A stretch of 64,000 bases of DNA from Octopus sinensis (taxonomy: Eukaryota): positions 27,962,001 through 28,026,000 of the forward strand of contig NC_043010.1 in assembly GCF_006345805.1 (NCBI RefSeq), written 5' to 3'. Each line of letters begins with the position of its first letter. Positions within the stretch are counted from its first letter, which is position 1. Below, piece by piece: positions 16,242 through 17,307 of this stretch. Below the pieces are notes generated by a model. It made no database searches and was not told the DNA's origin. It was given only the letters and a program-made list of their open reading frames with translations. The translations under genes were made by a program, and so were the position numbers.

Positions 16242-17307
16242 AATATCGAACAGTGTCAATGAGTGCTTATCACTGCAGTGGTGGGTAAATATTCTTTATT
16301 TGTGGGTCAACAAGGCTTGTAAAGAGAGATCTCTTTACAACTTTCAGGTGTAACATGTGGGAAAGTTTGTACTTGTCTCCATGCAGCACACTTGAAAATT
16401 ATCAAGAGATCTCTCTTTACAAGAAACCAATGGTAGCCTAGTTGACCCACAAATAAACCACACACACACATGCAGAGAGAGATACATGCATGTATTATGC
16501 ATAACTGTGTATCCAAAGTACTGGAATAAATACAAATATTAGAAAACCATTGGCTTTAATTTAGAATTATATCAGAATATAAACCATCAATGGTATAGAA
16601 AAAACAAATGGTGGGAGTCTCCTGGTGGATCATTTTACAATTAGCTGACCATTCCTCAAAGATGGCATCTTGAATGCCAAAGACAGAGATGTAGTATCAT
16701 ATATGCATAGAAAATCCTGGATGGGGGGAATGTTCCAAACTTTAGCATTAGATAGAATTTTAAAGCAGGAACAGAAAGATACCGTCAGCTTCTAAATATA
16801 GCACCTTCAAAATAATGAGCAAAAGCATTCTATAATACCATTCAGCTATTCTTCGACTGTTCAACTGCTCAATAACTGCAGTACTACTTCAATAGAATTA
16901 CTGATATTTTTATGCATTTTCAAAGACTTGGGGTAAAGTTAATGAATAGACTGGACAAAAAAAAAAAAGGAAGTACAGTTCTTACTGTCTAAATGGTCTT
17001 GGTTTACTGAATGGTCAGGAATAAAATAAATGAGATATTTGGGAAATGGAATACCATTTAGTTCTCACCCAATCTGGTGCCTTCAAATTGGGAGCAAAGC
17101 AGCAGCTCTCTATAAAACCCTTGCTGGGTTCTGATTTGAAGTGCATTTACAATTTTATTTTATTTATAAAACAATTAAACAGTAAAAACATTGATTAAAA
17201 TTTCTTCAAATATATTAGAAATAAATCCCTTCTCTATTCTCATTATCACCGACAAAAATCACAAAAAGGAATTTGCAGCCCATAAACTTACTTCATTTAA
17301 TTGTGTA

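What the first reader, a model, noticed from the sequence alone, without database searches (positions are those of the whole stretch)
16295..16457. 163-nt rod-like hairpin in non-repeat-looking sequence
Seen: 17 perfect bp (16295-16311 with 16441-16457) and 20 perfect bp (16316-16335 with 16404-16423), separated by an ~11-nt bulge that forms its own mini-hairpin (accaatggt). In-register pairing then continues through tttcaggtgt/acacttgaaa, catg/catg and aagt/actt to a 4-nt apex at 16367-16370. Three plus-strand C-A mismatches become G.U pairs on the minus strand, while two plus G-T pairs become A.C mismatches. This favours a minus-strand RNA with ADAR-preferred A.C sites. No TSD seen and no second copy in the window. 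Established: coleoids have extensive A-to-I editing and an expanded miRNA repertoire. Inference: an editing substrate, a small-RNA precursor or an old fold-back element.
Basis: partly seen in the sequence, partly recalled or inferred. Interest (0 to 1): 0.7.

Follow-up and report, generated by a model that had tools for sequence, protein, structure and literature searches.

The report
Inverted pair of octopus retroelement copies
The 163-nt hairpin is real, but it is two truncated copies of a common octopus mobile element joined head to head, one of probably hundreds of such hairpins in this genome and not a dedicated RNA gene.

Summary
The hairpin at 16295-16457 is real: 17 and 20 perfect bp, MFE -80 to -84 kcal/mol, z about -12 to -14. 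It is not unique sequence. A profile of related copies resolves it into two 5'-truncated copies of one interspersed repeat, joined head to head through a 5-nt microhomology (TCCAT, 16378-16382). Copy A (minus strand, 16382->16240) carries a 53-nt 'tail' and a (TA)17 microsatellite. Copy B (plus strand, 16378-16457) ends at ...CACAAATAAA next to (CA)n. Its non-coding parent is about 1 kb and its copies are truncated at many 5' points. All 20 adjacent pairs sampled are head to head, each with a different junction. Seventeen are tailed plus tailless and none is tailed plus tailed (P about 2e-6). This matches the insertion architecture described for Penelope-like elements, but no coding partner or hammerhead ribozyme was found, so membership is unproven. 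The window's arms are 82% identical, ordinary for the family. Editing or small-RNA production is untestable here and would be generic. Low interest.

The parts
16205..16239 (-). (TA)17 microsatellite abutting the 3' end (tail) of copy A
   Evidence: Sequence. Microsatellites flank 62-76% of family 3' ends against 16% background.
16240..16294 (-).
   Evidence: Shared with many family copies. HMM and pairwise alignment to the consensus.
16295..16382 (-). Arm of copy A (model 174 down to 74) = left arm of the hairpin plus the apex; carries a 13-nt internal deletion between 16317 and 16318
   Evidence: nhmmer E 8e-29 for copy A as a whole. Base-level alignment.
16378..16382 (.). TCCAT: 5-nt overlap shared by both copies (reverse complement of A's model 74-78 and B's model 94-98) = microhomology at the head-to-head junction
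   Evidence: Pairwise alignments of both copies to the consensus.
16378..16457 (+). Copy B (model 94-173/174), tailless, = right arm of the hairpin; ends at GTTGACCCACAAATAAA
   Evidence: nhmmer E 2e-20. Alignment.
16422..16436 (+).
   Evidence: Conserved in the family as CATGAAACCATTGGTAGCC. Deletion seen.
16458..16471 (+). C(CA)n microsatellite abutting the 3' end of tailless copy B
   Evidence: Sequence. Tailless ends are typically followed directly by a microsatellite.
16319..16338 (.). Local palindrome GTAAAGAGAGATCTCTTTAC inside arm A (its counterpart in arm B lies at about 16402-16421) = the family's internal stem-loop (model 116-137)
   Evidence: Direct repeat D8 and inverted repeat I8. 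The stem is paired in 82% of family cells with some compensatory changes.

Best explanation
The hairpin is the head-to-head junction of two 5'-truncated copies of one interspersed, non-coding, retroelement-like repeat family of Octopus. SHOWN: copy A (minus, 16382->16240) covers model positions 74-228, i.e. arm plus tail, next to (TA)17. Copy B (plus, 16378-16457) covers model 94-174, arm only, next to (CA)n. The two overlap by a 5-nt microhomology. The family has thousands of copies truncated at many 5' points, microsatellites at its 3' ends, and a recurrent head-to-head, tailed-plus-tailless pair architecture in which every junction differs. INFERRED: both arms were laid down in a single insertion event by a target-primed reverse-transcription variant. 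Either two cDNAs primed from the two target strands met and were joined by microhomology, or the first cDNA snapped back on itself. This is the process invoked for Penelope-like elements, which characteristically leave an inverted 5'-truncated copy at the 5' end and a short tail at only one end. The insertion is roughly 30-60 Myr old. Since then the arms have decayed neutrally to 82% identity, including a 13-nt slippage deletion that makes the 'bulge'. Any RNA-level behaviour (ADAR hyper-editing, small RNAs) would be a passive by-product of being transcribed dsRNA, not a selected function.
For: Repeat identity: at least 47 genomic matches. 455 against 0 control hits for the 26-nt terminus. Only 2 of 23 unbiased copies pass that filter, which gives about 5,000 arms. 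Anatomy in the window. Longer parent and 5' truncation series. No tRNA head. No ORF linked to the family. Pair architecture: 20 of 20 adjacent pairs head to head, 20 different junctions, 17 tailed plus tailless, 0 tailed plus tailed, P about 2e-6. Genome-wide exact-13-mer test: 6 head-to-head, 3 tandem, 0 tail-to-tail. Inverted tail-only fragments at the 5' ends of long copies (L015, L055, L062). Arms share derived sites (6 in the window), so both came from one source; the window's arm-to-arm identity of 0.82 is near the median of 18 pairs. Microsatellites sit at both outer ends of pairs. Literature match: PLE insertions show heavy 5' truncation, an inverted 5'-truncated copy adjacent at the 5' end, a 30-40-bp tail at only one end, and (TA)n target bias (PMC8557442). 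They also show junction overlap or palindromes with self-priming proposed (PMC3846280). Family divergence (median JC 0.22) coincides with the PLE/LINE burst at JC 0.2 in O. vulgaris (PMC13282606).
Against: No hammerhead ribozyme was found. Partial direct tandems (pLTR-like) are rare: 0 of 20 adjacent pairs and 3 genome-wide exact hits. No TSDs were found in 9 long copies or in the window. The tail is 53 nt, against 30-40 nt reported for PLEs. Microsatellites are mostly at 3' ends and only weakly at 5' ends (31% against 16%, p 0.03), so they could be tails rather than targets, as in CR1/L2/RTE-type LINE/SINE systems. The first locus sample was retrieved with the hairpin itself as query, which inflates the pair fraction. 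The terminus-selected sample still has pairs at 12 of 30 loci.
Confidence: 0.72

Rival explanations
1. A MITE or fold-back DNA transposon: the two arms are terminal inverted repeats of a cut-and-paste element.
For: Sharply defined outer termini TTTATTTGTGGGTTAAC...GTTAACCCACAAATAAA recur in many loci, and the hairpin form occurs repeatedly.
Against: Most copies are solo arms in one orientation with variable 5' truncation and extend into a ~1-kb linear parent. The inner junctions of all 20 pairs differ, so there is no constant unit. One side carries a 53-nt tail the other never has. No TSDs. Microsatellites sit at the 3' ends.
Confidence: 0.04
2. A DNA-level inverted duplication made after a single simple insertion (replication template switching or hairpin-capped break repair), not at insertion.
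For: The 5-nt microhomology at the junction and small palindromes inside the arm are also typical of replication-based fold-back inversions. Shared derived sites between the arms fit equally well.
Against: It does not explain why the inverted copy stops at the arm/tail boundary in 17 of 20 pairs, nor why that outer end is directly followed by its own microsatellite in 65% of cases, as a normal family 3' end is. It also does not explain why tailless solo copies with the same end exist (17 of 60 solos).
Confidence: 0.1
3. Two independent insertions of the same family that happened to land head to head.
For: The family is abundant and associated with microsatellites, so a local hotspot is conceivable.
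Against: 20 head-to-head against 0 tandem and 0 tail-to-tail among adjacent copies. There is a strict tailed/tailless asymmetry (P about 2e-6) and the junctions overlap by a few nt rather than being separated by target DNA. The arms also share derived sites.
Confidence: 0.02
4. A selected RNA element: an ADAR editing substrate, hairpin-RNA/endo-siRNA source or miRNA precursor exapted from the repeat.
For: A very stable ~70-bp imperfect duplex on either strand. Repeat-derived dsRNA is the principal ADAR hyper-editing target, and octopus has the highest signal among 21 species (PMC5625713).
Against: The arm-to-arm identity of 0.82 is typical of 18 sister pairs, so pairing is not unusually well preserved. 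One arm has lost 13 nt. There is no Rfam match and no detectable exon or gene nearby in the ORF and Pfam scans. The stem is far longer than a pre-miRNA. Hundreds of equivalent hairpins exist.
Confidence: 0.06

Closest known systems
Penelope-like element (PLE) insertion architecture (Penelope/Poseidon, Neptune, Naiad/Chlamys; Craig et al. 2021, PMC8557442; Arkhipova et al. 2013, PMC3846280)
   Same: Heavy 5' truncation. An inverted 5'-truncated copy directly adjacent at the 5' end (head to head). A short extension ('tail') at only one end of the unit. A few-nt overlap or palindrome at the inverted junction. Association with (TA)n-type microsatellites. Non-autonomous derivatives are known. As in Naiads, there is no hammerhead ribozyme.
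   Different: No RT/GIY-YIG partner was identified. Direct partial tandems (pLTRs) are rare. The tail is 53 nt rather than 30-40 nt. No TSDs were seen. Microsatellites are mainly at 3' ends. Membership is therefore unproven; the resemblance is in how it inserts.
LINE-1 'twin priming' 5' inversions (my own knowledge: Ostertag and Kazazian 2001)
   Same: Two cDNAs primed from the two strands of one target site and joined by microhomology give an inverted 5' segment next to a direct 3' segment.
   Different: In L1 the two segments come from adjacent, essentially non-overlapping parts of one RNA, so no hairpin results. Here the same 80-nt region is present twice. There is no poly(A) and no TSD, and the inverted copy always starts at one fixed internal position (the arm/tail boundary).
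SINEs and truncated LINE 3' ends with simple-repeat tails (CR1/L2/RTE-type systems; unclassified octopus SINEs, PMC13282606)
   Same: Short non-coding copies, a 5' truncation series, simple-repeat 3' ends, thousands of copies, and a conserved 3' stem-loop of the kind such reverse transcriptases recognise.
   Different: No tRNA/5S/7SL head. The microsatellite motif varies from copy to copy ((TA)n, (TG)n, (ACAT)n, (GATA)n) instead of one templated unit. Systematic inverted dimers with a one-sided tail are not a described feature of these systems.
Palindromic Harbinger-type MITE of Xenopus tropicalis as a self-folding ADAR substrate (PMC5625713)
   Same: A ~200-nt repeat-derived hairpin that can form tight dsRNA without a neighbouring inverted copy. 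This shows what the RNA would do if transcribed.
   Different: That hairpin is built into the consensus of a DNA transposon. Here it is made anew at each insertion with a different junction. No expression or editing data are available for the octopus locus.

Membership tests
MITE / fold-back DNA transposon | Unit of roughly constant length bounded by terminal inverted repeats | tested here: not met
   All 20 pairs have different inner junctions and arm lengths. Most copies are solo, single-orientation and 5'-truncated.
MITE / fold-back DNA transposon | Target-site duplication of fixed length | tested here: not met
   No TSD in the window or in 9 long copies. Old copies and microsatellite flanks weaken this test.
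Penelope-like element (or its non-autonomous derivative) | Inverted 5'-truncated copy adjacent at the 5' end (head-to-head) | tested here: met
   20 of 20 adjacent pairs are head to head. Genome-wide exact-13-mer counts are 6 head-to-head, 3 tandem, 0 tail-to-tail.
Penelope-like element (or its non-autonomous derivative) | Short 'tail' extension present at only one end | tested here: met
   17 of 20 pairs are tailed plus tailless, 0 are tailed plus tailed; P about 2e-6. The tail is 53 nt against the published 30-40 nt.
Penelope-like element (or its non-autonomous derivative) | Partial direct tandems forming pseudo-LTRs | tested here: inconclusive
   0 of 20 adjacent pairs. 3 exact-13-mer tandem loci genome-wide, of which two show family sequence in the printed match. 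One spaced direct pair in L026.
Penelope-like element (or its non-autonomous derivative) | Hammerhead ribozyme in the repeat (canonical PLEs and retrozymes; absent in Naiad/Chlamys) | tested here: not met
   No hammerhead match at E<=1 around the window hairpin, nor among the 150 best matches listed (of 178) for 12 long copies.
Penelope-like element (or its non-autonomous derivative) | Autonomous partner encoding PLE-type RT plus GIY-YIG endonuclease that shares the 3' end | not testable with these tools
ORFs in the held loci give no such domains.
Penelope-like element (or its non-autonomous derivative) | Insertion bias for microsatellites | tested here: inconclusive
   Microsatellites flank 62-76% of 3' ends and 31% of truncated 5' ends, against 16% background, p 0.03. 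They could be targets or tails.
Canonical SINE (tRNA/5S/7SL-derived) | Pol III-type head derived from a small RNA | tested here: not met
   ARAGORN finds no tRNA-like head in 5 long copies. No tRNA/5S/7SL hit among the Rfam matches listed for the long copies.
L1-type twin priming | Inverted 5' part and direct 3' part are adjacent, non-duplicated segments of one RNA, with poly(A) and a TSD | tested here: not met
   Model positions 94-174 are present in both arms. The ends carry microsatellites, not poly(A), and there is no TSD.
Animal miRNA precursor | About 60-80-nt hairpin matching a known family or conserved, with Drosha/Dicer read stacks | tested here: not met
   163 nt with a ~70-bp stem. 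The best Rfam miRNA hit is E 0.65 at 19 bits against a threshold of 90. Read stacks are not testable here.
ADAR hyper-editing substrate | Long near-perfect intramolecular dsRNA in a transcript, with clustered A-to-G mismatches | not testable with these tools
   The dsRNA potential is shown. Transcription and editing need RNA-seq.

The most novel reading that the evidence does not exclude
This family makes a new long hairpin at a large share of its insertions: about 40% of well-preserved termini lie in head-to-head pairs, so at least hundreds of loci. If such loci are transcribed within introns or UTRs, the family would be a major built-in source of the intramolecular dsRNA behind the exceptionally high ADAR hyper-editing load of octopus, and possibly of endo-siRNAs. 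The window's hairpin would be one such edited substrate. The family would also be the first characterised non-autonomous, ribozyme-less Penelope-type element in cephalopods.
Probability: 0.15. Interest if true: 0.5.

Novelty: new member of a known kind. Interest (0 to 1): 0.22.

Why it matters
For the scan, this shows that a striking 'rod-like hairpin in unique-looking sequence' in an octopus genome can be a routine by-product of transposon insertion. Such hairpins need a genome-wide copy-number check before any RNA-gene reading. For transposon biology, the family gives a clean, countable example of the 'inverted 5'-truncated partner plus one-sided tail' architecture in a short non-coding element: 20 independent junctions and a strict asymmetry. 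That architecture is still mechanistically unexplained for Penelope-like elements, and short copies are easier to analyse than 3-4-kb elements. For RNA editing, it points to a concrete class of self-folding repeats that could be checked against octopus hyper-editing maps.

Tried and rejected
- Rfam scan of 15500-17300: only sub-threshold hits driven by microsatellites; no miRNA or ribozyme.
- Rfam scan of 12 long family copies: no hammerhead, tRNA, 5S or 7SL among the 150 matches listed; all listed hits are microsatellite artefacts below the gathering scores.
- ARAGORN on the long copies: no tRNA-like head.
- TSD search in 9 long solo copies and in the window: nothing convincing.
- ORF scan of all 88 held loci plus Pfam: only unrelated LINE fragments (zf-RVT in L064), none upstream of a family copy in the right orientation.
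- Pfam scan of window ORFs: only an unrelated RT+PHD LINE fragment at 42.8-44.1 kb and no host exon near the hairpin.
- Full-text search for four diagnostic 19-21-mers: no paper.
- First idea, a MITE with ~80-bp TIRs: dropped once solo arms, the tail and the 5' truncation series appeared.
- Second idea, a master fold-back copy with later apical deletions: dropped because inverted fragments made of the tail alone exist (L015, L055, L062), some pairs extend into the 5' region (L038), and no two junctions coincide.
- Simple snap-back of the tailed first-strand cDNA cannot be the only route. By the HMM boundaries, the tailless copy reaches further 5' than the tailed one in about 10 of 17 mixed pairs.
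- Cross-species conservation could not be tried: no other cephalopod genome is reachable with these tools.

Full report
OBSERVATION. The sequence at 16295-16457 is as described. 16295-16311 pairs perfectly with 16441-16457 (17 bp), and 16316-16335 pairs perfectly with 16404-16423 (20 bp). As RNA, the plus strand folds at -80.4 kcal/mol (shuffles -33.2 +/- 3.9, z -12.3). The minus strand folds at -83.5 kcal/mol (z -14.2). None of 200 dinucleotide-preserving shuffles does as well. The hairpin is far beyond chance. It amounts to 3 kcal/mol, and it is what transition differences between two diverging arms produce.

NOT UNIQUE SEQUENCE. The window lies in a 2.72-Gb assembly (G000, C14:27,962,001-28,026,000). 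Searching that genome with the 163 nt gave at least 47 matches. Most cover one arm only (query 84-163, 78-90% identity), and a few cover the whole hairpin at about 69%. The 26-nt arm terminus GGTAGCCTTGTTAACCCACAAATAAA occurs 455 times at two or fewer mismatches, against 0 for the reversed control. In a sample of copies not selected through that terminus, only 2 of 23 pass this filter. That puts the genome at roughly 5,000 arms, with a wide interval. The organism is an Octopus: an unrelated LINE reverse-transcriptase ORF in the window (43385-44089) has its best named matches in O. vulgaris (83%) and O. bimaculoides.

ANATOMY OF THE FAMILY. Aligning oriented copies showed that homology does not stop at the hairpin's foot. 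After ...GTTAACCCACAAATAAA many copies continue with a 53-nt 'tail', GAATATTTATCCACCAATGCAGTGTTGAGCACTCATTCTCACTGTTTGATATTAG. The tail is followed by a microsatellite whose motif varies between copies: (TA)n, (TG)n, (ACAT)n, (GATA)n. In the window the reverse complement of this tail lies immediately left of the hairpin (16294->16240), followed by (TA)17 (16205-16239).

I built a 228-position profile HMM covering a 5' region, the arm (about m60-174) and the tail (m175-228). Upstream, many copies begin at a common point. A 5' extension found in some of them is itself repeated at least 40 times and is almost always followed by the core. The longest copies share about 1 kb: a ~400-nt 5' module, an internal microsatellite, a TG-rich extension, then the core. 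Copies are truncated at many different 5' positions. There is no ORF in this parent and no tRNA-like head. No Rfam family, hammerhead ribozymes included, appears among the listed matches. A short stem-loop inside the arm (m116-124 with m129-137) is paired in 82% of cells, against 38-70% in shifted registers, and shows some double compensatory changes. This is the local palindrome GTAAAGAGAGATCTCTTTAC seen in both arms of the window's hairpin.

WHAT THE HAIRPIN IS. In the 64-kb window the HMM finds two hits, both at this locus. Base-level alignment to the consensus gives:
- Copy A on the minus strand: model 74-226 at window 16382->16242 (tail to 16240).
- Copy B on the plus strand: model 94-173 at window 16378-16457.
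The two share five bases, TCCAT (16378-16382). These are at once the reverse complement of A's m74-78 and B's m94-98, so the join is a microhomology join. The apex of the hairpin is the part of A (m79-93) that B lacks. It is present in B and deleted from A between 16317 and 16318. It is bounded by AG/AG and contains a 9-nt palindrome, which points to a slippage deletion.

THE PAIR IS A FAMILY TRAIT. Across 88 loci fetched from the genome, there are 20 cases where two family copies lie within 60 nt of each other. All 20 are head to head, with 3' ends pointing outwards; none is tandem or tail to tail. All 20 junctions differ, so the pairs arose independently and not from a fold-back master copy. 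Seventeen pairs combine one tailed and one tailless copy, two are tailless plus tailless, one is ambiguous, and none is tailed plus tailed. Since 70% of solo copies are tailed, the probability of no tailed-plus-tailed pair among 20 is about 2e-6.

Tailless solo copies ending at ...AAATAAA directly followed by a microsatellite also exist (17 of 60). Several long copies carry an inverted fragment consisting only of the tail at their 5' end (L015, L055, L062). A genome-wide test with exact 13-mers gives 6 head-to-head loci, 3 tandem and 0 tail-to-tail. Microsatellites flank 76% and 65% of the two outer ends of pairs, 62% of solo 3' ends and 31% of truncated solo 5' ends, against 16% of random windows in the same loci. 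One caveat: the first 28 loci were retrieved with the hairpin as query, which inflates the pair fraction. The 30 loci retrieved through the terminus alone still show pairs at 12 loci.

NEUTRAL DECAY. The window's arms are 82% identical over 67 aligned model positions. Their identities to the consensus are 79% and 84%, and they share 6 derived sites. The 18 pairs range from 62% to 91%, with a median near 80%. Shared derived sites show that both arms came from one source. The identity shows no unusual preservation of pairing. The copies lie at JC 0.21 and 0.18 from the consensus, against a family median of 0.22. Arm to arm the distance is JC 0.206, about 0.10 per lineage. Using the calibration quoted for O. 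vulgaris (JC 0.09 about 25 Myr, JC 0.2 about 56 Myr; PMC13282606), the insertion is roughly 30-60 Myr old. This coincides with the Penelope-like/LINE burst reported there.

MECHANISM (inference). The pairs have fixed outer 3' ends, variable inner 5' ends, short microhomology at the join and arms from one source. That points to a single insertion in which both target strands primed reverse transcription. The two cDNAs were then joined by microhomology, or in some cases one cDNA snapped back on itself. In the window either route gives the observed TCCAT overlap. By the HMM boundaries, the tailless copy reaches further 5' than the tailed one in about 10 of 17 mixed pairs, so simple snap-back of the tailed cDNA cannot be the only route.

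The published description of Penelope-like element insertions matches point for point. [quoted passage not shown] It also lists overlapping or palindromic inverted junctions interpreted as self-priming (PMC3846280). Naiad-type PLEs lack hammerheads and are said to survive in cephalopods only as old remnants. I therefore say that the hairpin works like a PLE-type insertion scar. I do not file it as a PLE. Pseudo-LTR tandems are rare. The tail is longer than published and no TSD was found. A LINE/SINE system with simple-repeat tails remains possible.

RIVALS. A MITE or fold-back transposon is excluded by the solo, truncated, single-orientation majority, the differing junctions, the one-sided tail and the absence of TSDs. 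Two chance insertions are excluded by the 20:0:0 orientation count and the tail asymmetry. A later DNA-level fold-back duplication explains the microhomology. It does not explain why the inverted copy ends at the arm/tail boundary and there carries its own microsatellite, like a normal family 3' end. A selected RNA function has no support: pairing is ordinary, there is a 13-nt loss in one arm, there is no Rfam match, and no exon appears nearby in the ORF and Pfam scans. Passive ADAR hyper-editing if the locus is transcribed is plausible from the literature: repeat-derived dsRNA is the main target, octopus has the top signal, and palindromic repeats are edited on their own (PMC5625713). It would be shared with hundreds of sister hairpins.

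VERDICT. The feature is an ordinary repeat-derived inverted dimer and a new member of a known kind. The one point of wider interest is the very regular, countable PLE-like 'inverted partner plus one-sided tail' architecture in a short non-coding octopus family.

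Noticed in passing
window 42771-44584 (+): Frameshifted LINE fragment: RVT_1 in two adjacent ORFs plus a PHD-type zinc finger. Best named protein match is Octopus vulgaris (83%). Unrelated to the hairpin family (no HMM hit there).
   Followed up: partly
window about 47100-52000, also 20200-22400 and 9500-10500: Very long compound (TA)n/(TG)n-type microsatellite tracts; they appear as 100-300-aa '[12 protein letters not shown]' pseudo-ORFs in all frames. 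The tract at 47-52 kb spans about 5 kb.
   Followed up: no
window 2371-2733 (+), 5747-6091 (-), 46787-47119 (-), probably 72-437 (-) and 27865-28239 (+): Another interspersed repeat present several times in the window. It is recognisable from near-identical pseudo-peptides (...STPGLI.CKPSTYSISLFC.TA.LR.RK.TSIGCQAM.G...) followed by a microsatellite. Not classified.
   Followed up: no
family model positions 116-137; window 16319-16338 and about 16402-16421: Conserved 8-9-bp stem-loop inside each arm (GTTAAGAGA...TCTCTTTAC), paired in 82% of cells across 108 copies, with some double compensatory changes (TA->CG 7 times, AT->GC 9 times). Possibly a recognition hairpin for the mobilising reverse transcriptase.
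   Followed up: partly
L003, L004, L022, L027, L068 (upstream of the family copies): A different ~300-nt repeat ending in ...GGAAAGCGGACGTTAAATGA(TGA)n often lies just upstream of family copies, joined through microsatellites. L013/L081 carry a tRNA-looking SINE head (GGTGCATAGCTCAATGGTTAGAGCATCAGG...) upstream that ARAGORN does not call. This suggests repeated insertion of different retroelements into the same microsatellite tracts.
   Followed up: no
L034, L040/L059, L072, L087, L070, L084 (within about 0.3-1 kb): Second family copies, often in opposite orientation, lie a few hundred bases from the first. This is local clustering beyond the tight head-to-head pairs.
   Followed up: no
window 15740-15821 and 16192-16250; many loci: Sub-threshold Rfam hits to mir-297, mir-466, mir-1277, mir-3149 and others, with E down to 6e-10 but 20-65 bits against thresholds of 75-100. 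All sit on TA/TG microsatellites and are composition artefacts, not miRNA genes.
   Followed up: yes
window 16162-16190: Small separate palindrome GGTAGGCAttgcctatctTGCCTACC (8-bp stem) about 15 nt left of the (TA)17 tract; not part of the family model.
   Followed up: no
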